Virus record (IMG/VR): IMGVR_UViG_3300032331_003609
Coordinates: 180,851 to 244,850 of that record
Length of the DNA: 64,000 bases
Reading direction: 5' to 3' (one strand)
Below the pieces are notes generated by a model. It had not been told where the DNA came from. It saw only the letters and a program-made list of their open reading frames with translations, and made no database searches. Within the stretch, counting starts at the first letter, position 1; each line of letters begins with the position of its first letter. Positions 3,731 through 56,880 of this stretch are shown one piece after another. Position numbers and translations under genes: made by a program.

Positions 3731-3740
3731 TCAATGATAT

Positions 3741-8313: not shown

Positions 8314-8322
8314 AATATATAA
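8314..8322 (+). promoter_or_regulatory. Putative late promoter AATATATAA
   Basis: Recurring motif, 21 nt upstream of the first tail-module gene (8344). Confidence 0.6.
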
Positions 8323-10212: not shown

Positions 10213-10221
10213 AAATAGAAT

Positions 10222-12338: not shown

Positions 12339-12341
12339 GAG

Positions 12342-14534
12342 ATGGCAAATTTTTTAAACGAGCTTAAAGACAATTTTAGCAGTATAACTGATCCAAATCA
12401 GATATTGAATAAAGGTGTGGATAAGCAAAGAACCGCTTTTTTAAAAGGATTAAAATCTACTTCATCGGGGCAAAAAGAAGACCCAACTTACACCGGTTTT
12501 AGAATTATGTTTGATTTTGGATATGGCGGTCTAGTTGATCCTTCAACGTTTCTTCCTATCAGCCCTTTACTTTCAAAAGGAAAATTCAATGACGGGAAAA
12601 CTATGAAGAATGACGGTGCTACAGATTTCTTTCACCTTTCCAGACAAAAAATGAATATAGGAGAATATCCTAACTACACAGAAGCAATGCATTATATGAC
12701 TGCTGAAGGATTTCTAAGGGAAAGAAGAAGCGCCAGTGAAAATGGAGAAAACGGGGGAAGTGTAGATAATACAGGAAAGATAATAACTGGAGGGGATTTC
12801 GATAGATTTCAATCTGGTATTTCTCATAGAGCTGCTGCACTATCATCTTTTAGAAATTTACTTTCTAGTATAAATGAAAAAAGCCCATGGTTTATTCAAT
12901 CTATTGCAGGTTTAGATAAAGTTCTTGGGGTAGATCAGCAGAGACAAATTGAGGGAGCAAAAGGTAGAGAACAAAGATCCGGTGTTTTGACTTTTGAGTG
13001 TATTGATTCAATAGATCTTAGAATTAATGCAATGGCTGAGTTATACAGAAAAGCAACATATGATTATCAATATCATAGGCAGCTTATTCCTGATAACCTT
13101 CGCAAGTTTAGAATGTATATAATTGTTACAGAGATAAGACAGATTGACCTCCAAAAGAATCTAGCTGATGTTCTAAACCCTTTTAATTTTCCGGGAGTTA
13201 GAAATGCAGTTGATTCTATTAGAGACATTGCACAATCTGCCGGTATATTAAAAACAACTTCTCCGGAATCAACAAACGCTAAAACAGATCTTGAATCCTT
13301 TGTAAAATCATTTGAAAGAATGGAGCCTTACATTTTGATTTATCAATTAGATTTATGTGAGTTCAATTTTGATCAATCATATCCCTTTACAACACTAAAC
13401 AATTCAGTTGGCCCAGGGGCAGCAGCTGTTAAAAATACCTTTAAGGTACACGTTGGAGCAGCAAAAGAATATAAGCTTCAATATAATATTCTTTCGGATC
13501 TTATAAAAAATGAATCTACATTTTCACCTATATTGATTCAGGATAGTTGGAATTTAGTAGGATCTCATATGTTACAATCGGGAGGAGGAATTAACAATAA
13601 CTTAAATGTATTCAAAAAGCTAGCAAGCAATTTTATTACAAACTCTGTTGCTTCCGTTGTCCAACAACAGGTATCACCGATAGTTACTAAACAGTTACTA
13701 GGAAATGCCTATGGGTTTAGATTAAGCGATGCTGTTAGATCCTTAAATTCTGTTCAGGATCTTGTTAGTGGTATTAAAGAAATGAAAGATCCACTTGGAG
13801 ATTATAGGCCTCAATCAAGAGGACTAGGAGGTCCTAATGAAAGACAATATCCAACAGTAAAGGACGATGTTTACCCAAATAATAATCCTAATAATTCTAT
13901 AGGATCTGCACAAGGAAATGTTTTTCCGAAGCCGGTATCACCCGGAATTTCAGGATCAACAGCCTCTGATGATGTTTATTTAAATAGTCCTGGAAAAGAT
14001 CTTGGATTACCTTCTAGGGTTTATCCAAATGTAAAAGATGATGAATACAGACATGTTGGAGGGGATACTGATAATAACGATCTTGGTGTTCCTGATAGGA
14101 TATACCCTACCATAAAAGAAGATGTCTATTCTAAAACACCAGGCGAAGATTTAGGATTACCTAAAAGAATCTATAATACGACTAAAGATGATCTATATTC
14201 TCAGTCACCAGGAAATGATCTTGGTGTTCCTGATAGAAAATACACATCCATTAAAGATGATGTATATCCAAATAACGACATCAAATATACATCTATAGAA
14301 GAAAAAGTTTACGCGCCAGATCAAAAAATAGCTGAAGATCTAAAGGATGATGTTTATCCAAATACCGGAATAGAATATGGTGCTATTAAAGAAACGGTAT
14401 ATTCTATTGGTCAAACAAATCCAGAAAATCTTTCCAATCAAGACATCTATAAAGAAAGCCCAGGGAAAGACCTTGGATTACCAAAAAGATCATATCCTGC
14501 TATTAAAGATAATGCCTATAAAAAGAGATCTTAA
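12342..14534 (+). CDS. Putative tube-fold baseplate protein with C-terminal ~23-aa repeats
   Basis: The N-terminal half (PWFIQSIAGLD, LTFECIDSIDLRI, FRMYIIVTEIR) resembles tail-tube-type folds. The C-terminus is repetitive. Confidence 0.55.
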   Translation: MANFLNELKDNFSSITDPNQILNKGVDKQRTAFLKGLKSTSSGQKEDPTYTGFRIMFDFGYGGLVDPSTFLPISPLLSKGKFNDGKTMKNDGATDFFHLSRQKMNIGEYPNYTEAMHYMTAEGFLRERRSASENGENGGSVDNTGKIITGGDFDRFQSGISHRAAALSSFRNLLSSINEKSPWFIQSIAGLDKVLGVDQQRQIEGAKGREQRSGVLTFECIDSIDLRINAMAELYRKATYDYQYHRQLIPDNLRKFRMYIIVTEIRQIDLQKNLADVLNPFNFPGVRNAVDSIRDIAQSAGILKTTSPESTNAKTDLESFVKSFERMEPYILIYQLDLCEFNFDQSYPFTTLNNSVGPGAAAVKNTFKVHVGAAKEYKLQYNILSDLIKNESTFSPILIQDSWNLVGSHMLQSGGGINNNLNVFKKLASNFITNSVASVVQQQVSPIVTKQLLGNAYGFRLSDAVRSLNSVQDLVSGIKEMKDPLGDYRPQSRGLGGPNERQYPTVKDDVYPNNNPNNSIGSAQGNVFPKPVSPGISGSTASDDVYLNSPGKDLGLPSRVYPNVKDDEYRHVGGDTDNNDLGVPDRIYPTIKEDVYSKTPGEDLGLPKRIYNTTKDDLYSQSPGNDLGVPDRKYTSIKDDVYPNNDIKYTSIEEKVYAPDQKIAEDLKDDVYPNTGIEYGAIKETVYSIGQTNPENLSNQDIYKESPGKDLGLPKRSYPAIKDNAYKKRS
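13821..14520 (+). repeat. Intragenic repeat DLGxPxRxYxxxK(D/E)DxY, about 6 copies plus partials
   Basis: Visible in the translation. gatcttggtgttcctgatag occurs twice exactly. Confidence 0.85.
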
Positions 14535-14541
14535 AAACAAG

Positions 14542-14550
14542 GATAGATAA
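14542..14550 (+). promoter_or_regulatory. Putative late promoter variant GATAGATAA
   Basis: One mismatch to GATATATAA; 17 nt upstream of the spike gene. Confidence 0.5.
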
Positions 14551-14567
14551 GAGAAAATCCTGTTTGT

Positions 14568-15350
14568 ATGTCTTTACAAAATAATTTACAAGAATCTAAT
14601 ATAGAAAGGGCTCAGCACTTTCTGGGTGTTGTTGTGGATAACAAAGATCCAGAATTCAGAGCAAGATGTAAGGTTAGGGTTTTTGGTATTTTTGACGATG
14701 TTAAGGACGAGGATTTACCCTGGGCTTTTCAAAGATTTGATATTTCGTTTGGTGACGGCGGAGGATCGGGGAGAGTTAGTATACCAAAGCTTGGTTGTAT
14801 AGTCCATGTTCAATTCAATAACGGAAATTATTATTCACCCGAATACAAAGCAGTACAGGAACTTTCTAAAGATTTAATAACAGAAATAAGCGCATCCTAT
14901 GAAGGTGCGCATTCTTTAATATACGACGGAATAGAAAAACTAAAAATCTATTACACTGTTGCGAAAGGATTGGTTATAGATTTAAAAGAATCAACAGTTG
15001 TCATATCCAATGACAATTCTATAACAATAACACACGCAGGACAAACATCAACCCTTGAATTTAGAGGAGGAAAAATAACTGAATTTGCTAATTCTGAAAT
15101 TGAAAGTACTGCTACAACTAGAATTAAACAAAGTAGCAACGAAGTATGGGTAGATGGAAAAACAACGAAACTAGGACATGCTCCGGTATACTCTGCAATT
15201 CTTGCAGAACCCCTGTGGATGTTTTTAAAACAACTTGCAGCTGCAGTAGATGCTAAACTACCATCAACCCCAGGTACAATGACAAGTCTAGCTGAAAGCT
15301 ATGAACAACTTTCAACTTCTGATGTGGTTAAAGTAACAAAGTCTAATTAA
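14568..15350 (+). CDS. gp5: Baseplate central spike, gp5/gpV-like OB-fold (no lysozyme domain)
   Basis: FLGVVVDNKDPEFRARCKVRVFGIFDDVKDEDLPWA and SIPKLGCIVHVQF form the OB-fold, followed by beta-helix-like repeats. Confidence 0.85.
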   Translation: MSLQNNLQESNIERAQHFLGVVVDNKDPEFRARCKVRVFGIFDDVKDEDLPWAFQRFDISFGDGGGSGRVSIPKLGCIVHVQFNNGNYYSPEYKAVQELSKDLITEISASYEGAHSLIYDGIEKLKIYYTVAKGLVIDLKESTVVISNDNSITITHAGQTSTLEFRGGKITEFANSEIESTATTRIKQSSNEVWVDGKTTKLGHAPVYSAILAEPLWMFLKQLAAAVDAKLPSTPGTMTSLAESYEQLSTSDVVKVTKSN

Positions 15351-15355
15351 GATAA

Positions 15356-18300
15356 ATGGATTTTAATTTTAATAAACTTCAAGATATAAGTGATAGAATC
15401 TCCAGCGGGGAGCTTAAACCTGAGGATGTTCTGAGTGAATTTGGTGGATTTACCGATGACCTTCCTAGTGATGAGGAAATAATTAGCAATGCCGAGGAGC
15501 TTGAAAAATCAATAGATCCTGTTCCTATGATATTAACAGACGACGAGATTAATGATCTTATCTGTGCATATGAAGGAGAGGAGCTTGCTAATAGAATTTT
15601 TTGGGAGATATTAAGAAAGCAAAACTATTTAGACAGAATAACAGAAAGACCTGATTTTTTAAGAAATAGATATTTTGATAAATTCATGGATGATAACGAT
15701 TTATCTGATAGACTATTAAGTGCTAAAGAAATGGTATCTGACAGTTTAGATCTTGATTTACTTGGAATAAAATTTACAGGATCTAATAAAAAAATTAGGA
15801 AATTTAAAATAGGTCCGTTTGGATTTGAAATACATGTTATAACACACAAGGGAGTTCCCCTGTTTTTTCACGTTGCTCCAAAAAAAATGTCTATTCAATT
15901 TATAAGGGATCAGCTAAAAAAGAAAGGTAAAAAAGGAAAAGCAAAGAAATGCTCGGATGATATTTATAACAAATATGGATCTGGCGCAGGGCCAGCAACT
16001 TCTAACAATGGAGACTTTGGTGCAGGAACAGGATCGGAAGCTGGTTCAGATTCAGGATTTGGGGCTAATAATATAGATCCCGAAAATCTTGTATCTCTTC
16101 TAGATAATATTTTAGAGAGGGAATCTTCGGAAAGAAATTCAAATAATGCTTTTGATGTATCTGATATAGTAGATCAGGTTTTTTGTGAGCCCGATTTTCC
16201 TATTAATCCTGAAACAGGGGAACCCTTATTTACAAAGGATGATTTAAAATCTTTCATAGAAGAAATTTGTCTTCCAGAGAACGAATCTGCAATACCGGAG
16301 GTCTTACCAGAAGGCGGAATTGAGGACGTCGGCGAAAAAATAAACAAATGTCTTAGCCAAGCTAAAGATATTTTTAAAGATATAAGAGAAAATAACGAGC
16401 TTAGATCTAGATACGAAAAGGCAGAAAAAGATCTGGAAGAAATTCTTTATCACTATAAAATAATTAAAAATTATTATAACGGTCTTTCTAAAGCATTTGA
16501 GGCAAAAGCAAAATCTGGGAAGAAAGGAAATCCATTAAAGCTAATTCTTGGTTTAGTTCTAGCAACGTCGGATGCTAATAAATTCCTAGACGAGGTTAAG
16601 AATTTTTCTGGTAGATTTAAAGATACTAAAAAACAATCAACACCTGGTAAAAAAGGATATGTTGGTATTAAATTTAATCTGTCTTTTCCCCACGGACTTA
16701 AAAAAGAAATACCCTACGAAACAGTTAAACCTGAAGCTACTTCAGATCTTTTATCAACTAATTATGAAAGGGTAGATATCACACAATTACAGTTAGGGAT
16801 GGAATTTTCAAGTAAAGGTATCTTAGGATCAGGTAATTCGTCCTTTCTTAAATCATACGAGGACTTTATTATTTTTAAAGACGATAATCCTAAACTTGAC
16901 GTTCCTTTTTATAACTTTATTCAGGATATAGAAGGATCTAATAAATCTAAAGATGCTATTATAAAAGATATAGAAAAAAATCATGGATTTCTTTATTCTA
17001 CTCTTTTAGAGATATCTGCTAGTCCTTGGTTATTTTTTACCGAAGAAGAAAGAGGTGATAATAATGCAAGAAAATCTTCTGATATTAAACCTAAAAGTAC
17101 AAACAGCGAGGGAGAGCCTAATCAATCTTTTTATGATTTTTGGGGAAATTTTAAAAAATCTTTTGATGTTAAGTATACTGCTAGAAAGAAAATAGTTGAA
17201 GATAAAATAAAATCAATAAAAGTTTTATCCGACAAATTTGTTGATTCACTTGCTGATTATTATTTCACGGTAAACATGAGTTCAGCTTCGGATAACAGTA
17301 AGTTATTAAAAGATGTATCAGATAAAGCAGATAAAAATGTTGGGTATATTGAGGATCTTTTATTGATGATAGCTCAAAAAATTCAAGAATTGGACCAACA
17401 AAATTCTCCCGAAGTTTTACAAGCAAGAGCTGAATCAATAGATTGTTTTGGATCAGCGGACAATGGAAATGGAACAGGTGGATCAACATCCAGTGGTATT
17501 TCAGTAAATCTAGATGCAAACGGTGGTATAAAAAATTCTGGCGGAGATACAATAAAGGCAGCATGTCCTCCAGATTGCTGTGGATCACCGGGTCAAGCAT
17601 TCTCTGGAGGAAATATACTAGATGGATTAAACTCTCCAGATTGCCCTAATCTTTTTACTACATGCTATTGGAAAGAATTTGCAAAAAAAGCTACCACTGT
17701 TGGAATTCTTCCTTTACCGAATGGATTACCCCCAATAGAAAATCCCGCAGGATTTCTACCTAATATTGGATTAAAGTATTGGCCGGTGGGGTATCTTCCT
17801 CCATCTTTTATTCCATTGCCTCCTCCTTTAGTTAATCCTTTAGATGGAATGCCTTTTATAAGAATCCCAATGCCAATGATATGGACAGTGATTCCTCCTA
17901 TAGTTATACCTTTACCGATAGGGGTTATTGTAATATTCATTCCTTTCATTGGAGGATTTATGCCTAGCCCTTTAGTTTTCTTTCATGATTTTTTAACAGG
18001 AAATTCTATATTCCTTTTAGGAATTAGAGGGTTTAGATTTATTCCAAGAAAATCAGATCCCGTTATACCGGATCCTTTAGTTAGATTAAAACAATTTTTA
18101 TCCCTAGGAGTTCCTAATTATCTTTTTCCTTTTCCAAATTTAGGAAAAGATAATGTAGATGATCCTAAAAGAATAAAGAAAGATATACTAGCAAATCTTA
18201 AAAAAAGATTAGCAAATGCTAAGGTTAATATAGATTTTTCTAAAATACAAAAAGTACAAGACGATCTAGCAAAAAAGAAAAAAGATCTAGAAGATCAAAT

Positions 18301-19888
18301 CTTAGATCTGAAAAGAAAATCTCCTTTGGACGGATCTGATCCAAAGCAAAAGATAAAAGAACTTTCAGAGTTGGCTGCTTCTTTTGATTCGCAAAAGATA
18401 GAAGCAATTAAATCAGTAATGAAGGATTATTTAAAAACAGCAATTGTTGTTCCTGATATACAATTCCCTAAGCAATCAAAAAACCTAATTGCTGACATAC
18501 CTTCTCCTATAAAAATTATAAGAGATATTAACGCTAAAATAAAAATAGGAGCAATACCACAAGTACCTTCTACTGGGAGAAAAGTTAATTTAAAATCTAG
18601 AATTTTAGATTCTGTTAAGAATATAGAATTCAAAACATCATCAAAATACGCAGATCTAAATAAAGATTTACCCAAGGGATCAAGAATAGTTGCTGTTTTA
18701 AATTCTCCAATAGGAGAGATAGGAAAAAATCCGGAAGATCTAGAATCTTTAAAGGGATTAATCTCTGATGGTATAGGCCAGATCTTTAGTGGAGATAAGT
18801 CTCCTTTAAGCAATAAATCGCTCTTAACATTTAAACCTAAGTTAAAAAAAATTCCAAGGATTCCTGGAGCCAATTTACCAGCACCCGGATCTATAATAGC
18901 TACACCAAATCCGATTGTTAATTCAGTTAAAGGGTTTATTACAAAAAATCTAAACGTAAACGTTCAGGATCTTACCAAGCTTGCTGAAAGAACATCAATA
19001 GGGGGTAACAAAGTATTAAGAGAAAAAGACATTCAATTGATGATTAAAAATTCTTTGGATAAAACATTGAGTAAATTTCCAATCGATCTAAAGAATGTTA
19101 ATTTTCCTAATATTGCTAGTGCTGGTGATGTTGCCCAGGAGTATTCTAAATTCTCTTCGTCATTAGAACTACCAGCATTCCCTCCAAAGAAAAGTGGAAA
19201 CCCTGCAGTTCCTATAGGGATCGGGGGTATTCCTCCTATAATAATTCCTGGTTCTGTTATTGCAAGCTTTATAGTAGACGGAGCTTCATCATCAATAGAT
19301 TCAGTGGATGTTTCTAAAATTATGCCTGGGGGATTAGCTTCGTTTGATAATCTTTCTGCAGACGATATTAAAGTAATGGGAAATAATATAGCAGTTTCTT
19401 TTTTAAATAAGATTAGTATACCTGCATTAGATAATTTACCTCCTATACCATTAGAAGCAAGACCTCAAGATTATGTTGAACTTGTTATGAGTTTTCTTCC
19501 TGTTCACCCCTTTGCTGATATTGCGTTCACCTTACTGTGGACTAAATATAAAAGTCCACCCAGAATTCCAATACCTTCAGATATAATAGAACAGCTTCTA
19601 AATCTACAAAAAGCGATAGTTTACAAACTTCCTTGGCCGATAGTTGTTTTACTCGGGAGAAATGTTATTAACATTCTAAATCCTCTCTATACTAGGGAAG
19701 ATATTCCAAGATGGGATAGGATGTCTTTAAAAAATCCATTTTTTGTTGTTTTTCTTGATGAATTCATAAGATCTGCAGCAGATATTTCCGGAGGATTTAA
19801 ATTCTTTATAGGAGCGGGAAAATTATTTTATCCTCTCCCAACTCTCGAAATTAATTTGGGGTTTGGTACTAAAATTAACATAAACTAA
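15356..19888 (+). CDS. Large hypothetical virion protein with Cys cluster and Pro/Ile-rich hydrophobic segments
   Basis: 1510-aa ORF immediately after the spike gene; no family recognised. Confidence 0.6.
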   Translation: MDFNFNKLQDISDRISSGELKPEDVLSEFGGFTDDLPSDEEIISNAEELEKSIDPVPMILTDDEINDLICAYEGEELANRIFWEILRKQNYLDRITERPDFLRNRYFDKFMDDNDLSDRLLSAKEMVSDSLDLDLLGIKFTGSNKKIRKFKIGPFGFEIHVITHKGVPLFFHVAPKKMSIQFIRDQLKKKGKKGKAKKCSDDIYNKYGSGAGPATSNNGDFGAGTGSEAGSDSGFGANNIDPENLVSLLDNILERESSERNSNNAFDVSDIVDQVFCEPDFPINPETGEPLFTKDDLKSFIEEICLPENESAIPEVLPEGGIEDVGEKINKCLSQAKDIFKDIRENNELRSRYEKAEKDLEEILYHYKIIKNYYNGLSKAFEAKAKSGKKGNPLKLILGLVLATSDANKFLDEVKNFSGRFKDTKKQSTPGKKGYVGIKFNLSFPHGLKKEIPYETVKPEATSDLLSTNYERVDITQLQLGMEFSSKGILGSGNSSFLKSYEDFIIFKDDNPKLDVPFYNFIQDIEGSNKSKDAIIKDIEKNHGFLYSTLLEISASPWLFFTEEERGDNNARKSSDIKPKSTNSEGEPNQSFYDFWGNFKKSFDVKYTARKKIVEDKIKSIKVLSDKFVDSLADYYFTVNMSSASDNSKLLKDVSDKADKNVGYIEDLLLMIAQKIQELDQQNSPEVLQARAESIDCFGSADNGNGTGGSTSSGISVNLDANGGIKNSGGDTIKAACPPDCCGSPGQAFSGGNILDGLNSPDCPNLFTTCYWKEFAKKATTVGILPLPNGLPPIENPAGFLPNIGLKYWPVGYLPPSFIPLPPPLVNPLDGMPFIRIPMPMIWTVIPPIVIPLPIGVIVIFIPFIGGFMPSPLVFFHDFLTGNSIFLLGIRGFRFIPRKSDPVIPDPLVRLKQFLSLGVPNYLFPFPNLGKDNVDDPKRIKKDILANLKKRLANAKVNIDFSKIQKVQDDLAKKKKDLEDQILDLKRKSPLDGSDPKQKIKELSELAASFDSQKIEAIKSVMKDYLKTAIVVPDIQFPKQSKNLIADIPSPIKIIRDINAKIKIGAIPQVPSTGRKVNLKSRILDSVKNIEFKTSSKYADLNKDLPKGSRIVAVLNSPIGEIGKNPEDLESLKGLISDGIGQIFSGDKSPLSNKSLLTFKPKLKKIPRIPGANLPAPGSIIATPNPIVNSVKGFITKNLNVNVQDLTKLAERTSIGGNKVLREKDIQLMIKNSLDKTLSKFPIDLKNVNFPNIASAGDVAQEYSKFSSSLELPAFPPKKSGNPAVPIGIGGIPPIIIPGSVIASFIVDGASSSIDSVDVSKIMPGGLASFDNLSADDIKVMGNNIAVSFLNKISIPALDNLPPIPLEARPQDYVELVMSFLPVHPFADIAFTLLWTKYKSPPRIPIPSDIIEQLLNLQKAIVYKLPWPIVVLLGRNVINILNPLYTREDIPRWDRMSLKNPFFVVFLDEFIRSAADISGGFKFFIGAGKLFYPLPTLEINLGFGTKININ

Positions 19889-19910
19889 AAATCATTTAAA
19901 AACAAAAAAA

Positions 19911-21035
19911 ATGGCTAACAAAAGACAATACACAAGGGACGAGTATTCTCCGGAAGAAAGGGCTGTTATGGACGAACTTTACGAAGGTCACTTTAGAGTA
20001 ACTTTTGCAGACAACCCATCTCAATCATATTCTAAAGAGCTGGAAGAAAACCAAGTTCTAAGTGTAAGAATTACACAAATCAGAGGAACAAATGCAATAG
20101 GGGAAACCTCAGTGGGTCAATCCGTTGCAATAGATTTAATGAAGGAAGAAAAAGCAATCAAAAGATTGGGATTCCCTGCACTTGATGTACAGGAAGGATC
20201 ACAATTGGATGTTGTTATATTCAAAGATAAATCTGGAATGTACAACGGATCTCTAGCAGCGGGATACGAAAATTCATTAAAGACTGATCTATTGAATTCC
20301 ATTAAAGATGAGAAATCAGCATACACAGTAAGAATTGATTCAACATGCCCAGGTGGATTTATGGTGAACCTTTCTGGTATCAAGTGTTTCTTGCCTGGAT
20401 CTTTAGCAGCTGCTAATAGAATCATAGACTTCCAATCATTTGTTGGAAAAACAATCAATATTATGATTGAGACCTATGACGAAAGAAGAGACATCTTCGT
20501 TGTTTCCTTTAAGAAATATCTTAAACACGTTATTAATGCTAAGGTTGAAGAACTTTCTCTCACCCAAAAATATACGGGAACGGTTACAGGAGCATCAAAT
20601 GCTGGTGTATTTGTAGAGTGGGATCAGTATTACACTGGCTTAATCCCTGCTGAAGAATTTGATAATGCAGGTATTAAAATGGATTTAAGTTCAGGAGGAA
20701 GCGTATCATTCTATGTTTCTGATTTTAGAAATCCGAACAGAATTGTACTAAGATTAAATCCACCGGAAGGGAAAGATAAGGATTTACAAGAGCTTAGAGA
20801 CATTTCTTTATCAGAAGATAAAGAAAATAAAATATATAGAGGGACAGTGACAAAGGTGAAGAATTTCGGTGTTTTTGTAAAACTTGAAAATAACATCGTT
20901 GGCCTTGTTGAAAAGGACTATTTGGCTGGAAATCCAAAAGATTATGAGGTAGGATCTGAAATATCTTGCACCATTATGGACGTAGAGCTACAGAGTTCAA
21001 AACTCTATCTAAAGCAAAAAATTGAAAATACTTGA
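19911..21035 (+). CDS. rpsA: Ribosomal protein bS1 homolog (about 4 S1 domains)
   Basis: GGFMVNLSGIKCFLPGS matches bS1 D2 (GGxxVxxxGIxAFLPGS). YTGTVTGASNAGVFVE...TGLI and YRGTVTKVKNFGVFVKLENNIVGLV are canonical S1 repeats. Confidence 0.85.
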   Translation: MANKRQYTRDEYSPEERAVMDELYEGHFRVTFADNPSQSYSKELEENQVLSVRITQIRGTNAIGETSVGQSVAIDLMKEEKAIKRLGFPALDVQEGSQLDVVIFKDKSGMYNGSLAAGYENSLKTDLLNSIKDEKSAYTVRIDSTCPGGFMVNLSGIKCFLPGSLAAANRIIDFQSFVGKTINIMIETYDERRDIFVVSFKKYLKHVINAKVEELSLTQKYTGTVTGASNAGVFVEWDQYYTGLIPAEEFDNAGIKMDLSSGGSVSFYVSDFRNPNRIVLRLNPPEGKDKDLQELRDISLSEDKENKIYRGTVTKVKNFGVFVKLENNIVGLVEKDYLAGNPKDYEVGSEISCTIMDVELQSSKLYLKQKIENT

Positions 21036-22482
21036 TCAAAATTTTTATTACGCAGCTAAAATTGGATTCGAATTTGAATTCATGTCTTCTTTTTCAAGAA
21101 AAGAAATAGCTGAAAAAATTGGGGAAGATTTAGGGAAACAGGTAAAGGTCTTTAGAAAATACCACTCTAAATTTTCCCCAACTCGTGATATTTTTAAACT
21201 AGAGCCTGATTTTTCTGGTGGTCTTAAAATGGTTGAATTAATAACTGGGCCGATGGATTACTTTGAGGCAATACCGGTTTTAATTAGAATCTTAAAATGG
21301 ATAGACGAAAATGGGTATACCAGCGAAAGATGCGCATTACAATTCGGTCTAAGTTTTGATAGAGTAAAATACCCAACCCTTATAGATTTTACCCAATTAA
21401 ACCCTTTGAAATTTGTTCTTGGGTTTGATGAAGAATTCATATGGAATAAATTTCCAGAAAGAAGAGGATCATTATATGCCAAATCTATTAAAAGAATATC
21501 CCCATCTAATAGATTTATAAGAGGACACAAGGATATTTTAGGAGACAGAAATTCTTACACTGTTTATACTGAAAAAAATATGGGTGTCAATCTAACTAAA
21601 TTACAAGATGGTTACATGGAAGTTAGATACCTGGGGGGTACAGATTATCAAAAAAAGTATACAGACATTAAAGAAATTATGGATTATATAATAACCCATA
21701 CATTTAATTGCCTTTTACACAATGATACTCTGACTCAAAAAGAGACTTCAACACTCAGTGAATTAATATCTAAGGTTTATAAAGAAACTGAAAGTTTTAT
21801 AGATCCTGAGTCATTTATGAAGAACTATCCCAATCTTCATGTTACTGTTGACTTAAGAGAAGATTTACAAATAATTAAAACATATTTCAATGAAGTAAAA
21901 AACTTCCTTTATAGTTTAATTGTTGATAATGGGATTACAGAGGGATTTTTAAACTACGACACGCAAATTGCTAAGTATCAATTAAAAGACGGAAGGACAA
22001 AAAGAGCTAATTTATTAAAAGATTTAGATCTAATAGAATGCGATATTGAAGGAAACATAGCAGGGTGTAGAATATTTGGGTGTAAATTAAATAGCTGTCA
22101 AATAGAAGATTCACAATTTGTTATGAATAATGACATAAAAGATTCTAAAATTCTTGACTGCGATTTAAGCTTTAGCAATAATGTTATTAATTCTTATATA
22201 GATTCTAAAGAAAGAGAGATTAGCTGTGAGATTGAAGGTGGAGTTATTAGATCTGGTTATATAACAAAATTGGCAGTTATCTCAGATTCGACTGAGATTA
22301 TTAGTAATAGCGCAGATGCTAAAGGTAAGGACAAGGGTAAGGGTAAAGGGGGAAAAATGATAAAGTCTACCGTCTTCCCAGATAGAAACTACGAAGATAT
22401 TACGAAACCGCAGCCATTTGAAGATCTGAATAAGAGAAGACCTGCTTTTTCAGTGAACAAACTATACAAAAATAACAACTAA
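21022..22482 (+). CDS. Putative amidoligase (COOH-NH2 ligase, Amidoligase_2-like) with C-terminal beta-helix-like region
   Basis: KIGFEFEF, LEPDFSGG..VELITGP, CALQFGLS and KNMGVN...MEVRYLGG. TTG start overlaps the S1 gene stop. Confidence 0.7.
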   Translation: MKILDQNFYYAAKIGFEFEFMSSFSRKEIAEKIGEDLGKQVKVFRKYHSKFSPTRDIFKLEPDFSGGLKMVELITGPMDYFEAIPVLIRILKWIDENGYTSERCALQFGLSFDRVKYPTLIDFTQLNPLKFVLGFDEEFIWNKFPERRGSLYAKSIKRISPSNRFIRGHKDILGDRNSYTVYTEKNMGVNLTKLQDGYMEVRYLGGTDYQKKYTDIKEIMDYIITHTFNCLLHNDTLTQKETSTLSELISKVYKETESFIDPESFMKNYPNLHVTVDLREDLQIIKTYFNEVKNFLYSLIVDNGITEGFLNYDTQIAKYQLKDGRTKRANLLKDLDLIECDIEGNIAGCRIFGCKLNSCQIEDSQFVMNNDIKDSKILDCDLSFSNNVINSYIDSKEREISCEIEGGVIRSGYITKLAVISDSTEIISNSADAKGKDKGKGKGGKMIKSTVFPDRNYEDITKPQPFEDLNKRRPAFSVNKLYKNNN

Positions 22483-22484
22483 GA

Positions 22485-23255
22485 ATGACTACATCAGAAG
22501 AGGCATTAATACAGGAGGTAAAGGACGACATATCTCATTCTTGCGCATTACCATATGCATTAAACGACCAAGAGATAAAAAGAATTATTAAAAGGGCTAA
22601 GGCTTATTTTTATGATAATTATCAATATGCAGTAGAAGATAAAATATTAGTATTGCCATCCCAGGTATTTTCAAATGCTCAGTTTAAAGCGACAAGGCAA
22701 GTTCAATTGCCTGACTGCGTTATAAGTGTTTGGGATGTAAGAGAAGTGGGGGGTGCAGGAATGATAGGTACTCCTGATAGAGATTTTGGAGACTCCAAAC
22801 TTTTAGGATCTGAGCTTATGCTAAGCCCATTTATAGGGGACAATTTAGTCTATAGAACTGTATTATATTCATTCTTCGATCTTGCTAAAGCTTTTCTTTT
22901 AGAGACTTTTGCATTCGGATACAATAAAAATACTAAAAGGCTAACTATAAATGGACGTGATCCTAGTAGAACAACATCATCGGGTCTTACTATTGGGGGT
23001 AAAGATGTGGGGGTAAGAGCATTTATAGCCATCCCTGATGAAAACCTTTATTCTGATGAGCTTTTTGTTAGATATGTTCTAGCAGAAGCAAAAATTAACA
23101 TAGGCAGGCTTTTAGGCACTTTTGGCTATCAATTGCCGGGCGGAGTGACCATAAATGCAGCTGCTATTCAAGGAATTGGACAGGCAGAAAAAACTGAAGT
23201 TATGGAAATGATTAAATCAGAAAATACCCCAAGTTACTTCCTACAGTGGAATTAA
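22485..23255 (+). CDS. gp13: Neck protein, T4 gp13-like
   Basis: IKRAKAYFYDNY at the N-terminus and FVRYVLAEAKINIGRLLGTFGYQLPGGVTINA at the C-terminus. Confidence 0.8.
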   Translation: MTTSEEALIQEVKDDISHSCALPYALNDQEIKRIIKRAKAYFYDNYQYAVEDKILVLPSQVFSNAQFKATRQVQLPDCVISVWDVREVGGAGMIGTPDRDFGDSKLLGSELMLSPFIGDNLVYRTVLYSFFDLAKAFLLETFAFGYNKNTKRLTINGRDPSRTTSSGLTIGGKDVGVRAFIAIPDENLYSDELFVRYVLAEAKINIGRLLGTFGYQLPGGVTINAAAIQGIGQAEKTEVMEMIKSENTPSYFLQWN

Positions 23256-23287: not shown

Positions 23288-23296
23288 AATATATAA
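23288..23296 (+). promoter_or_regulatory. Putative late promoter AATATATAA
   Basis: Recurring motif, 7 nt upstream of the gp25-like ATG. Confidence 0.6.
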
Positions 23297-23678: not shown

Positions 23679-25403
23679 ATGGATTTATTTAAAAAAAATC
23701 GTGCCAAGATACAAGACCTATTACAGGATACTCTTGAGCTAATACAAAAAAGGTATAACCAAGCAAATCAGTTATTTACTGTTGCTTCTGCATGGGGACA
23801 AATTCTATTTGTTTTACAGAACCTGTCTCAGCTTATATTATTCTTTATAGAAGATTCTATAACTGAACTTGATATCAAAAAAGCAAGTAGAGAAAGCTCT
23901 GTGTATGGATTAGCAGCGTTAACTGGGCATAATGCTACAAGAAGTGGTTGTGCAAGAGGCCAAATAGATATTACATGGAATGGACAGGATTCTACCAGTG
24001 TTGGTGGTAGTGCTATTTTAATTCCAAAATATTCAACTATAAAATTCCAAAATGGTGGTGTTGGTTATCTTTTAAATCTTCCGCAGGATTATGCTAGATT
24101 AAATCTAACCCCTTCCAGTAAAATATCATGCGAGATAATGGAAGGAAGTATAAAGGCATCTACGTTTACTGGTAGCGGAACTGTATTACAAAGTTATAAC
24201 GTATCCGACAGGGTAACTTCAACTGTTGATAATTTTGAGGTTAAAGTATTTGTTGATAGCGAAGAATGGAAAATTTATGAATCATTATATGATATACCTT
24301 TTAATTATAAAGGATGTTTAATTAAAACTGGAATTAATAACGGTATAGACGTTATCTTTGGTAATATTAATTTTGGAAAAATACCTCCTCTTGGATCAAC
24401 TATTCAGGTTCAATATGTAGAAACCATAGGAATTGCGGGAAATATAAATTCTTTAGAACCTGGAAAAATTGTATTTGAATTTGATGATGATGGTACAGAT
24501 GCATTTGGCAATCCTGTTTCATTGAAGGATTATTTAAAAATAAATTGTGTTACCGCTCCCCAACTTGGTACCGACAAAGAATCAATACAGCTTACTAGAA
24601 TTTTAGCTCCTAAAACATCAAGATCTTTCGTATTAGCAAATGCTGAAACGTATATTACATATTTTGAAAAATTTGGTACCTTTTCTATAATTGAAGCATT
24701 TTCAACATTTGATGATCAATATTTAGACGATGATAACATTATTTATGTTTTATTAGTACCTGACATAACACAAAAGCTTAAAACAAATGAAACATATTTT
24801 GATATAAAAGAAACTGAATTTATATTAACAGATTATCAGAAGAAAAGATTATTAAAGGTAATAGATGATAGTGGACAAAAAATAGTAACCACTGAGGTTA
24901 AAATATTAGATCCTAAAATTTCAAGATATGTGATTAATGTTTTAATTAGCATTTTTGAGGGATATGATCCTGATACGGTTCGAGGTCAAATTGTTGATTC
25001 AATAAGTTCATATTTTATAGGAATAAGAAGAAGAGATAAAATTCCAAGATCTGATTTAATCGCTATATTAGAATCTATAGCAGGAGTTGATTCTGTTACC
25101 TTGTTTTTTGTTAGTGAGAAAAATGAAAAATATGCTATAAGTGTTGAAGGACTTCCTGATAATGATCCTAAGAAAAATATTGTTTTAGGATTAGATGAAT
25201 TTGGCGATATAGTATTTGGTAAAGATGAGATAGCAATCATAACTGGTGGATGGGGTGATAGAGCAGGTCTTTATTATGATAAAGGTGCAGATTACAATAA
25301 AATATCTTCTATTAATATTGATATTAGAGCTACTGTTCCCGTAACATATAACACAGAGATCAATAATAAGAATAAGGCATTCTTAAAAAATAACAATCAA
25401 TAA
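23679..25403 (+). CDS. gp6: Baseplate wedge protein gp6/baseplate J-like
   Basis: SVYGLAALTGHNATR, KTGINNGIDVIFGNINFGKIP, ESIQLTR...VLANAETY and ISSYF...SDLIAILESIAGVDSV. It follows gp25. Confidence 0.85.
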   Translation: MDLFKKNRAKIQDLLQDTLELIQKRYNQANQLFTVASAWGQILFVLQNLSQLILFFIEDSITELDIKKASRESSVYGLAALTGHNATRSGCARGQIDITWNGQDSTSVGGSAILIPKYSTIKFQNGGVGYLLNLPQDYARLNLTPSSKISCEIMEGSIKASTFTGSGTVLQSYNVSDRVTSTVDNFEVKVFVDSEEWKIYESLYDIPFNYKGCLIKTGINNGIDVIFGNINFGKIPPLGSTIQVQYVETIGIAGNINSLEPGKIVFEFDDDGTDAFGNPVSLKDYLKINCVTAPQLGTDKESIQLTRILAPKTSRSFVLANAETYITYFEKFGTFSIIEAFSTFDDQYLDDDNIIYVLLVPDITQKLKTNETYFDIKETEFILTDYQKKRLLKVIDDSGQKIVTTEVKILDPKISRYVINVLISIFEGYDPDTVRGQIVDSISSYFIGIRRRDKIPRSDLIAILESIAGVDSVTLFFVSEKNEKYAISVEGLPDNDPKKNIVLGLDEFGDIVFGKDEIAIITGGWGDRAGLYYDKGADYNKISSINIDIRATVPVTYNTEINNKNKAFLKNNNQ

Positions 25404-25657
25404 TGTTTAACACAGAAAGAAAGAGCTATTACGAATATATTGAAACAACGGAAGACAGAAGAACAAATGTAGGTTTTGAGTACGAGGGAAGAATATTTGA
25501 AAAAACACTTTCTTCTATAACTCTTGGGGGAGACAATAACAGAAAAAGTATATTGAATTCTATCGAAAAAGTTGTTTTTAGATTAATTGAAACAACAAAG
25601 AATATTAGAAATTTTGTTAACTATAGAGTTCCTAAAAATAATAAGTATGTTCGATAA
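25403..25657 (+). CDS. Small hypothetical baseplate-associated protein
   Basis: Translationally coupled (TAATG) on both sides, between the gp6-like and gp7-like genes. Confidence 0.65.
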   Translation: MFNTERKSYYEYIETTEDRRTNVGFEYEGRIFEKTLSSITLGGDNNRKSILNSIEKVVFRLIETTKNIRNFVNYRVPKNNKYVR

Positions 25658-28600
25658 TGAGTTATAAAAATCTTATATTTTTTAATAAATCTGGGCATCA
25701 GACAAATCTAATCTGGAATGGGGATTTTTGGGAAGCAAGATTAATGCTACCCAGGGTCTCTGTTGACCTATTTGAAATAGAGCATTTCTTTATTGTAGAA
25801 AAATTTTTAGACCTTAACGGTAAAACAGTTTATGGATATCCGCATATAACACCAGATATAACAGCAACCACAACAGCTTCTGGAATATATGGAAATTTTA
25901 CAGCTGGATCTAATGTAATAAAAACAGATAATGCTCCTCTAGCTGATTATATAGGAGCGAAAGTTTTTACTGATCAATTTCCTCAAGGAAATGAAGTAGT
26001 TTCAGTTGACCTATTGCTAAATAGAATAACATTAAAAGATTCTGCAACCATAACAGAAAATGATGTTCCATTAATATTTAATCTTTGGAAGTCATCTTTC
26101 GAAACTACAAGAAACGTTTTAGATTTTGATACCTTTGATTCTTTTAAGGGTGATATAATTAAGGGAACTGATTATATCACAACATCTTCTGATTTGTCTA
26201 AAATTAAAAGCAGCGGAGATTATTTAACTTTATTAGGTAATGGCGTTCCAAAAAATGCTAGAATAACAAGTATAGTTGGAAATAAGATTTATCTAAATAA
26301 AATATGTAATGTTAATATTACAAATACATCAATATTTGTATATCCAGTTGAAGAAAAAAATGATGTATCTGATTATATTTTTCAGTATGAAGTTTTTGAA
26401 GATAAAACTTTAGATGCTCCGGTATTAAACAAACTACAGAATTCTTATATTAAGGTTGGATACGACGGAACGGAATCTTTCCAAAATGACATAAGAACCA
26501 GTGATTATATTGATTCATCAAGTATTACTATTAACATAGCTTTGAATTCACCAGATGAAGGAATATTTGGAAGAACCCTTGTTATAGAGGATTATTCTTT
26601 GGGATATCCTAAGATCATAGCAAGAATTGAAATACACGGGGAGACAATAGGGGAAGACGAAAGATATAAAACTTTATTAAGTAACTTCGGAAGAAAATTA
26701 AACTCTGAAGATGCTTACATTTTAAGACCAAGTGATCCTAAAGAACCGTATACTGATTATGAAATAATAAATGCCAAAAGAAAAGAACTTTTATTGGAAG
26801 GCCATGAAATATTTTCATATCTTGGATCATACAAGGGATTAATAAATGCAATAAGATTTTTTGGATATCAGGATTTAAGGGTTAAAGAATATTGGTTAAA
26901 TGTAAAAAAATCAGATACCGCAGTAGGTGCTCTTAAGGAGAATTCTGATTTTATGAACAAATTAAAAGCAAAGCCCCAGAGTCAGAGCACCCTAATAGGA
27001 AATCTTTTAGATGATGAGAATGCTGGTAGTTATAAACAAGTAGAAATATACGGTAAGAAAAATGACGGAACATACGGATTAAAATCATCAATGGAGGAAT
27101 TATTTCCATCCTCTAGTTATAAAAAAACTGCACTGTTTGGACTTTTCTATGATATTAATGTTGTAGTTGATGAAGCTTACGATGAATTTGGATATCCTAT
27201 TACAAAAAATGCAGATGTATTTTCACCTGATGAGGTTTTAATTAAACTATTTGGATTAAAGGAAAAACTTAAGAAAGATTATCTTCCATTAAATGCTAGG
27301 ATTATAGATATTACTGGTGAAGGTGTTTATTTTGGAATTTATAAAAACAGATTGTGGATAGACAATTTAAAAATAGACGAGTTACATCAAGGAATAGATC
27401 TAGATCTTGCTTTTACTCCAGATTATGGATACGTTGAAGATTTAAGACCTTTCTATCTTAGACCTAATAAATACATTCCGTTTGTTCCTTTTGTTGGAGA
27501 AAACCTTTCTTCATACAAATACACAACCTACGGCAATCATGTAGAACCTAAAGCAACAAATCCGATATTCACTGGGACTGAATCTAAAAAATTAGCAGAT
27601 TCTATTAAGCTGTTTTATGAAAGAAGAAACAAAGGAGAAATAAAGTATAGATTAGGAGACGGAGATAGTAAGAATAATGGTTACTTTAAATTGTTTGATG
27701 GACAAAAATATGAAGTACCTGCAGGATTTCCTACAGTTTTAGAAGTCACAACATTCAATATAAGTTGGGATGAAGTAGGTAATCATTGGGATGCATTAGA
27801 AAATAATTTTGCAACATACTCAACGTCATTATCTTCTTGGAATGATACTGGTTATACGGGAGATGGATTAATAAATTCTTCTTTAAGCTACACTTTTGAT
27901 ACTGCAACAGGATTTGGTACGCTATTTAGTATAACGTTACCTACTGGATTAAATTTCCTACATCCTAGTATGGGATCAGTCCAATTGAAATTCACTTCAA
28001 CGGATGATAGTTCTTTTCAGTTTCTTTGCGAGGTAGAGAATGGCACAACACCCGGAACGTATTACGACGCAACATCCGGTGTAACCCCCTTAAAACTTTT
28101 ATGGTCAAAGGGGGATGGAATAATGGACACCTGGAAGGTTGAGCTGGTTAATACATTCAAAGATCTTTTAAGCGTTGAGTATTATGATTATTCATTTAAT
28201 CCTGGGGGATTCTATTCGTGGGACAATCTTAGATTTGCTGGATTCTATGAAATAGAATGGACAGTAATTAAAAGAGGTGAAGTACCCTTCTATTACGAAT
28301 TTAGGGGCGCTATAAGCGACTATTATAAATTACCAATTGTACTACCGTATGACGGAATATACTCCGTTAAATGCAGAGTATGGGATGGATTCAATGATAT
28401 TTGCACCGTTAACTATGAAAATTGTATAGAGGTTAAGAAAAGGGACATAGAATTAACCAATATTGCCAGATTTAGAGAGACCGAAGTTTATACATGGGAG
28501 AATACCAAACAAAACTGGGACGATTATATTTCTATGTGGTTATTCCCGGTAGAGAAAGGAAGAGATCCTGGTATTATTTCAAATCAGATACTAAATCCAG

Positions 28601-56860: not shown

Positions 56861-56880
56861 GATAATAAATATGAGATTTT

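What the first reader, a model, noticed from the sequence alone, without database searches (positions are those of the whole stretch)
19911..21035. Phage-encoded ribosomal protein S1 inside the baseplate operon
Seen: about four S1 repeats, including a bS1-like N-terminal helix and D1/D2 ribosome-binding region, so it is shorter than the six-domain host bS1. Its leader is A-rich (aaaaacaaaaaaaATG) and it has no late-promoter motif. Known: bS1 homologs have been reported in huge phages, and Bacteroidota initiate translation largely without Shine-Dalgarno pairing. Inference: it replaces host bS1 to bias ribosomes toward A/U-rich phage leaders. Its placement among structural genes suggests a late translational takeover.
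Basis: partly seen in the sequence, partly recalled or inferred. Interest (0 to 1): 0.65.

Follow-up and report, generated by a model that had tools for sequence, protein, structure and literature searches.

The report
Phage short S1 protein in baseplate operon
A freshwater jumbo phage that probably infects Bacteroidota carries a shortened copy of ribosomal protein S1 that keeps the ribosome-docking end. Every related phage I could check keeps this gene at the same spot among its tail-baseplate genes, so it probably redirects host ribosomes, though nobody has tested this.

Summary
Window 19911-21035 (+) is a real 374-aa gene. Its product has an N-terminal helix and four S1/OB domains.

It is a bS1 derivative, not a Tex, PNPase or RNase-type S1 protein:
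- rpsA models and solved bS1 chains are the best matches.
- Domain 2 matches only bS1 domain 2.
- The N-terminal helix carries the motif of Bacteroidota bS1.
- A fold of residues 1-136 with a Bacteroidota uS2 scored 0.72 against 0.01 for the best control, on the surfaces E. coli bS1 uses. This may reflect the model's memory of solved complexes.

It is not a canonical rpsA. It scores 84 bits, against 520-626 for real Bacteroidota rpsA. It lacks two C-terminal domains and the uS8-contact helix.

New here: about 380-aa "short S1" proteins form one long-stemmed clade. In 9 of 9 informative loci the gene sits between the baseplate hub and a T4 gp13-like neck gene.

The genome avoids Shine-Dalgarno sites. 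It also encodes bS21, a tmRNA and 13 tRNAs.

The A-rich leader is the genome's norm. Ribosome replacement and bias toward phage mRNAs remain inference. Phage S1 homologs were already reported in 2020.

The parts
19911..21035 (+). Gene for the 374-aa short S1-like protein (P0001)
   Evidence: ORF, translation. Pfam S1 E 1.8e-16. rpsA models are the best NCBIfam hits, at 84 bits. 388 relatives of about 370 aa.
19889..19910 (+). 22-nt A-rich intergenic leader, with no SD site and no promoter-like motif
   Evidence: Sequence. A stands at -3, -6, -12 and -13, which is true of 17 of 215 genes. SD sites are depleted genome-wide.
19950..20003 (+). N-terminal helix (residues 14-31) carrying the Bacteroidota bS1 motif EYS..E....L..LYEG.F; predicted uS2 contact
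   Evidence: AF2 helix. hhalign of the helix alone against 32 Bacteroidota-phylum bS1: probability 95%, E 3.3e-8. Interface residues 20-31.
20052..20252 (+). Domain 1 (residues 48-114): an OB fold whose sequence is too diverged to match bS1 D1 on its own
   Evidence: AF2. Foldseek match to bS1 NTD+D1+D2, chain 9guq_B, TM 0.70. No sequence hit on its own. Loop 63-73 lies in the predicted uS2 interface.
20322..20507 (+). Domain 2 (residues 138-199): counterpart of bS1 OB2, and the best-conserved part of the family
   Evidence: The D2 HMM hits only bS1 D2, at 28-31 bits. The motif GGF.V.L.GI..FLPGSL is shared with E. coli bS1. F150 and F160 align with E. coli F120 and F130. D2 and D3 hold all but one of the positions conserved across the superfamily.
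20568..20753 (+). Domain 3 (residues 220-281): an S1 domain with a partly eroded RNA-binding signature in this subfamily
   Evidence: AF2. Weak best match to bS1 D5. Alignment. Superfamily consensus fGiFvEf..TGl.h against AGVFVEW..TGLIP here.
20835..21014 (+). Domain 4 (residues 309-368): a canonical S1 domain (FGVFV, GLVE)
   Evidence: Best Pfam S1 stretch at 303-363. Best match to bS1 D5 at 24-31 bits, against 15-16 for Tex and PNPase.
8315..8322 (+). Nearest upstream promoter-like motif ATATATAA; putative start of the transcription unit 8344-23255 that contains the S1 gene
   Evidence: All 7 + strand copies in the window lie 5-29 nt before a gene start. The same motif lies 24 nt before the tmRNA.
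23289..23296 (+). Next promoter-like motif, 7 nt before the gp25-sized gene; marks the likely start of the next unit
14568..15350 (+). Baseplate hub protein with a gp5/gp27-type OB domain, conserved upstream of S1 in all relatives
   Evidence: phrog_430 and phrog_37871. PF04717 Phage_base_V.
15356..19888 (+). 1510-aa ORF in the variable slot between the hub and S1
   Evidence: The slot holds 150-1710 aa or two small ORFs in relatives.
21022..22482 (+). Conserved protein of about 486 aa, function unknown, that follows S1 in relatives (the true start may be the ATG at 21082)
   Evidence: 26-60% identity in 7 loci.
22485..23255 (+). T4 gp13-like neck protein
   Evidence: PF26809 on the homologs. 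phrog_211.
23679..25403 (+). Baseplate wedge protein (gp6/Baseplate_J-like)
   Evidence: phrog_219 E 3e-21. PF26079, a faint hit, on homologs.

Best explanation
The gene encodes a truncated paralogue of Bacteroidota-type ribosomal protein bS1 that belongs to a phage lineage. It keeps the uS2-docking N-terminal helix, OB1, OB2 and two S1 domains. It lacks D5, D6 and the Bacteroidia uS8-contact helix.

Shown: the homology, the domain architecture, the conserved gene position, and the genome's lack of SD sites.

Inferred:
1. It is transcribed with the baseplate and neck genes, from the promoter-like motif at 8315.
2. The helix and OB1 seat it on host uS2 at the mRNA exit platform, in place of host bS1 or on vacant sites.
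3. OB2 to D4 hold SD-less, A-rich phage mRNAs there, possibly together with the phage's own bS21.
4. This sustains or favours phage protein synthesis.
For: bS1 identity:
- The top NCBIfam hits are all rpsA models and are collinear.
- A PDB profile search puts bS1 chains at the top (1.4e-28).
- The top Foldseek matches are ribosome-bound E. coli bS1: 9gut_B at 3e-23, and NTD+D1+D2 (9guq_B) with TM 0.70 and rmsd 4.4.
- hhalign against 32 Bacteroidota-phylum bS1 gives probability 99.8%, E 6e-29, over 333 collinear columns from the N-helix to D4.
- The D2 HMM hits only bS1 D2.

Docking:
- The helix motif is shared with Bacteroidota bS1.
- The fold with Flavipsychrobacter uS2 scored ipSAE 0.72 (runs 0.71-0.73), best of 3 controls 0.01. 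That mark was reached by 58 of 80 solved complexes and 2 of 110 mismatched pairs. The runs agree in at least 80% of their contacts, and the partner's pLDDT is at least 77.
- The contacts fall on uS2 12-24, 30-47 and 205-211. These correspond to the E. coli bS1 contact sites at uS2 H18, F32 and N203-D205 (PMC10123108).
- Five of the 6 invariant residues within 1-75 lie in that interface (p = 0.025).

Context:
- SD motifs are depleted: GGAG occurs in 1 of 216 leaders, against a 5.5% background.
- The phage encodes bS21. Its best 80 matches in bacterial genomes are all but one named as Bacteroidota.
- The family is under strong conservation: 59% mean column identity over 60 sequences.
Against: - There is no experimental or expression evidence. 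No RNA run holds this DNA.
- The complex score may come from the model's memory of solved bS1-uS2 structures.
- D1 has no detectable sequence similarity to bS1 D1.
- No counterpart of E. coli Lys43 was established.
- The conserved His of the S1 RNA-binding signature is replaced in both D3 (Pro) and D4 (Glu), and D3 also lacks the first aromatic residue.
- Hosts in Bacteroidia also use A-rich, SD-less leaders, so no discriminating signal for phage mRNAs was found.
- The fixed position in a virion gene block also fits rival roles.
Confidence: 0.5

Rival explanations
1. It is an RNA-binding protein that acts off the ribosome. This bS1-derived OB array would serve as an mRNA chaperone or stabiliser, a translational regulator of the structural operon, or a cofactor for a phage enzyme. 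Host S1 serves T4 RegB, Q-beta replicase and lambda Beta in that way.
For: D3 and D4 are generic RNA-binding-type S1 domains. Host bS1 is known to be recruited off the ribosome by phages (summarised in PMC13157829). Al-Shayeb et al. left open a role 'on or off the ribosome' (PMC7162821).
Against: An off-ribosome role alone does not explain retention of the uS2-type N-terminal helix, OB1 and OB2, or the concentration of invariant residues in the predicted uS2 interface. Q-beta replicase does, however, also bind S1 through D1-D2.
Confidence: 0.2
2. It is a virion-associated protein. It would be made late, then packaged or attached near the baseplate or neck, and delivered with the DNA so that it acts on host ribosomes at the very start of the next infection. 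Alternatively it serves as an assembly factor for the tail.
For: The gene sits between the baseplate hub and the gp13-like neck gene in 9 of 9 informative loci, down to 24-33% identity and including the most basal family member. It has no promoter-like motif of its own. The same idea was raised for phage bS21, which also lies among structural genes (PMC9723584).
Against: It matches no structural PHROG or Pfam family. Its sequence is clearly of bS1 type. In the Mahaphage-like and Lak genomes the S1 homolog is not next to homologs of these structural genes. No proteomic data exist.
Confidence: 0.15
3. It is a dominant-negative shut-off factor. It would occupy uS2 and displace host bS1. Because it lacks D5-D6, it would fail to support host mRNAs, while phage mRNAs with very short leaders still initiate.
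For: The docking module is kept while two C-terminal domains are lost. The promoter-like motif lies only 3-35 nt before many ATGs, which implies very short leaders.
Against: The S1 gene itself and most genes of its operon are internal cistrons that need ordinary initiation. Transcription start sites were not mapped. The two retained S1 domains suggest it keeps mRNA binding.
Confidence: 0.1
4. It is a recently captured host rpsA fragment, or bacterial contamination of the contig.
For: It has been annotated as '30S ribosomal protein S1' in databases.
Against: It scores 84 bits on TIGR00717, against 520-626 for Bacteroidota rpsA. The 53 short S1 proteins form one clade on a stem of 2.08 substitutions per site, apart from 32 cellular bS1. 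No relative was found among the GTDB species genomes. The phage synteny is conserved.
Confidence: 0.02

Closest known systems
Bacterial ribosomal protein bS1 (rpsA) of Bacteroidota, for example the F. johnsoniae bS1 described in PMC13000457
   Same: It shares the N-terminal helix motif (EYS..E....L..LYEG), and the domains OB1-OB4 align in the same order. The OB2 motif GGF.V.L.GI..FLPGSL is shared, including the two aromatic residues equivalent to E. coli F120 and F130. The predicted uS2 contact surfaces are the same.
   Different: It has 374 aa and four domains, against roughly 560-625 aa and six domains. It lacks the 'FNW' helix that contacts uS8. OB1 is diverged beyond sequence recognition. 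It scores 84 bits, against 520-626 on TIGR00717. It is encoded in a phage baseplate operon, and it sits on a stem of 2.08 substitutions per site.
Putative rpS1 proteins of huge phages (Al-Shayeb et al. 2020, PMC7162821), including LR756500 and the 634-735 kb and Lak genomes
   Same: These are multi-S1-domain proteins in large phages whose genomes rarely show SD sites. The S1 gene of LR756500 lies in the same place as here (26% identity). Three of the five genomes checked also carry bS21.
   Different: That paper did not resolve whether they are 'true' rpS1 proteins. It described neither the docking helix nor the fixed baseplate position. In LR745206, LR756501, LR756502, LR756504 and Lak-A2 the gene is not beside homologs of these structural genes.
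Phage-encoded bS21 of freshwater Bacteroidetes phages (Chen et al. 2022, PMC9723584)
   Same: It is a ribosomal protein of the mRNA-exit platform, encoded among structural genes of large freshwater phages predicted to infect Bacteroidetes. That paper proposes that it substitutes into host ribosomes late in infection. The present genome also has a bS21 gene.
   Different: It is a different protein. Those phages were reported to lack other ribosomal protein genes. Their bS21 lies near the capsid and terminase genes on the opposite strand. Here bS21 lies about 180 kb away from the S1 gene.
bS1 of cyanophage PhiMa05 (PMC13157829)
   Same: It is a bS1 homolog in a jumbo phage.
   Different: The PhiMa05 gene groups with cellular (Vampirovibrio-like) bS1 and lies beside other ribosomal protein genes, which suggests recent capture. 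The present family is an old clade within one phage lineage, sitting in a tail gene block.

Membership tests
Ribosomal protein bS1 (rpsA) | N-terminal helix that docks on uS2 | tested here: met
   hhalign of the helix alone against Bacteroidota-phylum bS1: probability 95%, E 3.3e-8. The predicted complex places residues 20-31 on the uS2 F32/F34 region, score 0.72 against 0.01 for the best control. This is in silico only.
Ribosomal protein bS1 (rpsA) | OB1 domain with a loop entering the acidic pocket of uS2 (E. coli Lys43) | tested here: inconclusive
   The OB fold is present, and loop 63-73 is predicted to touch uS2 205-211, the NDD pocket. There is no sequence similarity to bS1 D1, and no Lys in that loop. 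Invariant K42 lies before the domain.
Ribosomal protein bS1 (rpsA) | OB2 domain with the conserved aromatic pocket | tested here: met
   The D2 HMM scores 28-31 bits on bS1 D2 only. F150 and F160 align with E. coli F120 and F130 (PMC10123108).
Ribosomal protein bS1 (rpsA) | Four further RNA-binding S1 domains (six in all in Bacteroidota and Proteobacteria) | tested here: not met
   Only two further domains are present. The alignment ends at template column 364 of 621.
Ribosomal protein bS1 (rpsA) | Score above the curated equivalog cut-off | tested here: not met
   83.9 bits against a cut-off of 577. Forty-five Bacteroidota-phylum genomes score 520-626.
Ribosomal protein bS1 (rpsA) | Bacteroidia-specific first helix (FLANFNWHNF type) contacting uS8 | tested here: not met
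   It is absent from the phage N-terminus. It is present in the Bacteroidales, Dokdonia, Tenacibaculum, Chitinophagales and Flavipsychrobacter bS1 (PMC13000457).
Ribosomal protein bS1 (rpsA) | Physical component of the 30S subunit | not testable with these tools
   This needs ribosome fractionation with mass spectrometry, or cryo-EM.
Phage-encoded rpS1-like proteins of huge phages | Multi-S1-domain protein encoded in a large phage genome that lacks SD sites | tested here: met
   The record is a 244,850-bp virus record. Four domains are present. SD sites are depleted. It is homologous to the proteins of LR756500-504, LR745206 and the Lak phages.
Tex, PNPase, RNase R/II and RNase E S1-domain proteins | A single S1 domain attached to a catalytic or other core domain | tested here: not met
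   No other domain was found. D4 scores 15-16 bits on the Tex and PNPase S1 domains, against 24-31 on bS1 D5. D2 does not match them.
Baseplate or tail structural proteins | Homology to a known virion protein family | tested here: not met
   No PHROG hit. Fold matches are to bS1 and not to tail proteins. Presence in the virion itself cannot be tested here.

The most novel reading that the evidence does not exclude
The short S1 is a functional part of the virion programme of a whole clade of jumbo phages. It would be made with the baseplate and neck proteins, carried in or on the particle, and delivered with the DNA. The incoming phage would then bring its own mRNA-recruiting ribosomal protein, perhaps paired with phage bS21, and reprogramme Bacteroidota ribosomes before any phage gene is expressed.
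Probability: 0.12. Interest if true: 0.85.

Novelty: new member of a known kind. Interest (0 to 1): 0.55.

Why it matters
Bacteroidota start translation without Shine-Dalgarno pairing. Recent work on F. johnsoniae points to an interplay between bS1 and bS21 on the ribosome's mRNA-exit platform (PMC13000457). A phage lineage has kept a minimal bS1 (docking helix, OB1, OB2 and two S1 domains) over a long evolutionary span. This genome, and 3 of the 5 other S1-encoding huge phages checked, also carry their own bS21.

That minimal form is a natural dissection of which parts of bS1 matter for SD-independent initiation. It also gives a concrete candidate for ribosome reprogramming by a virus, and this can be tested in existing F. 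johnsoniae in-vitro systems.

The fixed position inside the baseplate and neck gene block is unexplained. I found no report of it in the papers searched. It suggests that the timing or location of the protein is tied to virion production.

Tried and rejected
- PHROGs gave no family for the protein.
- A megablast search of the region against deposited phages found nothing.
- PDB sequence searches with the N-terminus plus D1 alone found nothing even at E 10, whether as a single sequence or as a profile. The homology of that part rests on the profile-profile alignment to Bacteroidota bS1 and on the fold.
- A scan of one genome per prokaryote species with the family alignment found no relative. 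The family is therefore not a cellular gene in those genomes.
- Relatives cannot be drawn for a virus record.
- Cluster look-ups gave no organism names that help to assign a host.
- The search of sequencing runs found only DNA holders, in freshwater metagenomes from 12 studies, and no RNA. Expression could not be examined, and I did not use read laying.
- Synteny with the baseplate genes was looked for and not found in LR745206, LR756501, LR756502, LR756504 and Lak-A2, by tblastn and by profile HMMs.
- No uS2 gene is present in the phage.
- 'The A-rich leader is special' is rejected: it is the genome's norm.
- 'Recent host capture' is rejected.
- The collinear D3-to-D3 and D4-to-D4 equivalence is not firm. 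By HMM score both phage domains resemble bS1 D5 most.
- The donor phylum could not be tested by a tree, because Acinetobacter was the only bS1 from outside Bacteroidota at hand.

Full report
1. THE OBSERVATION

Window 19911-21035 (+) is an open frame of 374 codons with an ATG start. A 22-nt A-rich spacer separates it from the stop codon of the upstream gene.

Pfam finds S1 domains at E 1.8e-16, in two stretches. PHROGs has no family for the protein. The best NCBIfam hits are all rpsA models and are collinear, for example residues 77-368 onto positions 40-341 of the 516 in TIGR00717. The score is only 84 bits against a cut-off of 577.

An AlphaFold2 model built on 60 relatives has a mean pLDDT of 81.7. 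It shows a helix at 14-31 and four OB/S1 domains at 48-114, 138-199, 220-281 and 309-368.

2. THE GENOME

- The window is the last 64 kb of a 244,850-bp virus record, estimated 86% complete, with 34.4% G+C.
- Near-identical DNA occurs in freshwater metagenomes from 12 studies. No RNA run holds it.
- Leaders avoid SD motifs. GGAG occurs in 1 of 216 leaders, against a 5.5% background. Positions -15 to -1 are 50-60% A.
- The A-rich leader of the S1 gene is good but not exceptional. Twenty-six of 215 genes are at least as A-rich, and 17 of 215 also have A at -3, -6, -12 and -13.
- The genome also carries a tmRNA, 13 tRNAs and a 64-aa bS21 gene, but no uS2 gene.
- The best 80 matches to the bS21 in species genomes are 48-65% identical. 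All but one are named as Bacteroidota, including Chitinophagales, Flavipsychrobacter, Bacteroidales, Saprospiraceae and Dokdonia. The search patterns came from the query itself, which biases this result.
- Together with the leader style, this makes a Bacteroidota host likely.

3. IS IT bS1?

Evidence that it is a bS1 derivative:
- A profile of the family hits solved bS1 chains first (1.4e-28). They share the OB2 motif GGF.V.L.GI..FLPGSL.
- The top Foldseek matches are ribosome-bound E. coli bS1. The N-terminal helix with D1 and D2 superposes on chain 9guq_B with TM 0.70.
- I fetched rpsA from 45 Bacteroidota-phylum genomes, which score 520-626 bits on TIGR00717.
- A profile-profile alignment of the phage family against 32 of these gives probability 99.8% and E 6e-29. 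It is collinear from the N-terminal helix to the fourth domain and ends at column 364 of 621.
- The helix alone aligns at probability 95% and E 3.3e-8. The phage reads EYSPEERAVMDELYEGHF, and one bacterial example reads EYSESEYEELKKLYEGTL.

Domain by domain:
- D2 matches only bS1 D2, at 28-31 bits.
- D1 matches nothing by sequence.
- D3 and D4 match bS1 D5 best. D4 scores 24-31 bits there, against 15-16 for the Tex and PNPase S1 domains.

The protein is nevertheless not a canonical rpsA. Two domains are missing. The Bacteroidia 'FNW' helix that contacts uS8 (PMC13000457) is missing. The conserved His of the S1 RNA-binding signature is replaced in both D3 and D4.

4. DOCKING

I folded residues 1-136, with their alignment, together with residues 1-245 of Flavipsychrobacter uS2.
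- The score was ipSAE 0.72 (runs 0.71-0.73). The best of 3 controls scored 0.01.
- That mark was reached by 58 of 80 solved complexes and by 2 of 110 mismatched pairs.
- The runs agree in at least 80% of their contacts, and the partner's pLDDT is at least 77.
- The contacts involve phage residues 5-9, 20-31, 40-43 and 55-73.
- On uS2 they involve 12-24, 30-47 and 205-211. In that uS2 these segments hold H17/H20, F32/F34 and N205-D207.
- These correspond to the E. coli bS1 contact sites at uS2 H18, F32 and N203-D205 (PMC10123108).
- Five of the six invariant residues in positions 1-75 lie in this interface (p = 0.025).

Because bS1-uS2 complexes have been solved, this pass shows likeness and does not show binding.

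5. FAMILY AND POSITION

- The word search found 388 relatives of about 370 aa, on contigs of up to 453 kb.
- The exhaustive profile search found 169 cluster representatives at E <= 1e-30. Nearly all are 340-430 aa long, and none of the best 150 has the length of a canonical bS1.
- In a tree, 53 such proteins form one clade (SH-aLRT 100, stem 2.08 substitutions per site). They stand apart from 32 Bacteroidota-phylum bS1 (SH-aLRT 97).
- Acinetobacter was the only bS1 from outside Bacteroidota, so the donor lineage is not tested.
- No relative was found among the GTDB species genomes.

In every locus with enough flanking DNA, the gene order is:
baseplate hub (Phage_base_V) - a variable slot - S1 - a protein of 410-540 aa - T4 gp13-like - a 112-123-aa protein - a Baseplate_J-like protein of about 550-580 aa - a protein of about 80 aa - a large protein.

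- In several relatives extra genes are inserted. L016 has small ORFs between S1 and the 539-aa protein, and L001, L015-L018 have one to several genes around the gp13-like gene.
- This order holds in the window and in L001, L003, LR756500, L015, L016, L017, L018 and L141. S1 identity to the window ranges from 24% to 60%, and L141 holds the most basal family member.
- S1 diverges about as fast as its neighbours, or a little faster.
- In LR745206, LR756501, LR756502, LR756504 and Lak-A2 the S1 homolog is not next to homologs of these genes.

6. EXPRESSION SIGNALS

The motif (G/A)ATATATAA is enriched in intergenic DNA. It lies 3-35 nt before start codons across the genome and 24 nt before the tmRNA. 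In the window it occurs on the + strand at 7128, 8315, 23289, 46866, 52162, 60135 and 63585.

The S1 gene therefore lies inside a putative unit running from 8344 to 23255. The timing of that unit is inferred from its content and was not measured.

7. INTERPRETATION

Most likely (0.5): the protein is a phage-lineage bS1 paralogue that seats on host uS2 and helps recruit SD-less phage mRNAs during production of the virion, possibly together with phage bS21. F. johnsoniae data link bS1 stimulation of SD-less initiation to intact bS21 (PMC13000457).

Rivals:
- an RNA-binding role off the ribosome (0.2);
- virion association or delivery, or a role in tail assembly (0.15);
- dominant-negative shut-off of host translation (0.1);
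- recent host capture or contamination (0.02).

8. NOVELTY

- Phage rpS1-like proteins, and their link with SD-poor genomes, were reported in 2020 (PMC7162821). A bS1 was reported in cyanophage PhiMa05 in 2026 (PMC13157829).
- The same family of about 380 aa is already in UniProt viral entries, named 'S1 motif domain-containing protein' or '30S ribosomal protein S1'.
- I did not find the following in the papers searched:
  - the minimal architecture with a Bacteroidota-type docking helix;
  - the monophyly and age of the family;
  - its fixed position in the baseplate and neck block.
- I file it as a new member of a known kind, of moderate interest.

Noticed in passing
G000:C1:80042-95637 (outside the window): The phage carries a tmRNA (tag peptide ARQEIGASIINMAFANAPVALAA) and 13 tRNA genes in a cluster. 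The promoter-like motif ATATATAA lies 24 nt before the tmRNA.
   Followed up: partly
G000:C1:18962-19114 (L014:1486-1680): A 64-aa bS21 gene (PF01165, 47.8 bits) lies next to a carbamoyltransferase-like ORF. Its best 80 matches in bacterial genomes are all but one named as Bacteroidota. bS21 is also present in LR745206, LR756501 and LR756502, but not in LR756500 or Lak-A2.
   Followed up: yes
window 7128, 8315, 23289, 46866, 52162, 60135, 63585 (+ strand); 38 copies on the + strand of the whole genome: The motif (G/A)ATATATAA lies 3-35 nt before start codons. If it works like a -10-type late promoter, many transcripts would have very short leaders or none.
   Followed up: partly
window 15356-19888: The slot between the hub and S1 is highly variable. 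It holds 1510 aa here, 1323-1710 aa in three relatives, 803 aa in L016 and 424 aa in LR756500. It holds two small ORFs in L017 and L018, and 150 aa in L141.
   Followed up: partly
window 2070-5680: Three of the four genes in this stretch (2070-3104, 3741-4676, 4673-5680) are nucleotide-sugar epimerase-like (phrog_540, E down to 4e-93). This suggests a sugar-modification module.
   Followed up: no
window 25657-33633, 37607-41167 and 41183-46858: Three very large ORFs of 2658, 1186 and 1891 aa follow the baseplate genes. The first has SBBP beta-propeller repeats. The second matches phrog_29329 at 2e-145.
   Followed up: no
window 55880-57933: A gp32-like single-strand DNA-binding protein (phrog_224) and a DNA primase (phrog_47) follow the tail genes. 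The gap before the SSB gene has no ATATATAA motif, which hints at a second class of promoter.
   Followed up: no
L001:13348-14022 and L018:1-684: Mobile elements lie inside the conserved module in relatives. L001 has a GIY-YIG homing endonuclease just upstream of the gp13-like gene. L018 has an IS605 OrfB/TnpB-type gene.
   Followed up: no
L140 (G001:C38:19224-19874): The uS2 gene of the Chitinophagales MAG closest to the phage bS21 reads with 12 in-frame stop codons. These are probably assembly errors, so I used the Flavipsychrobacter uS2 instead.
   Followed up: no
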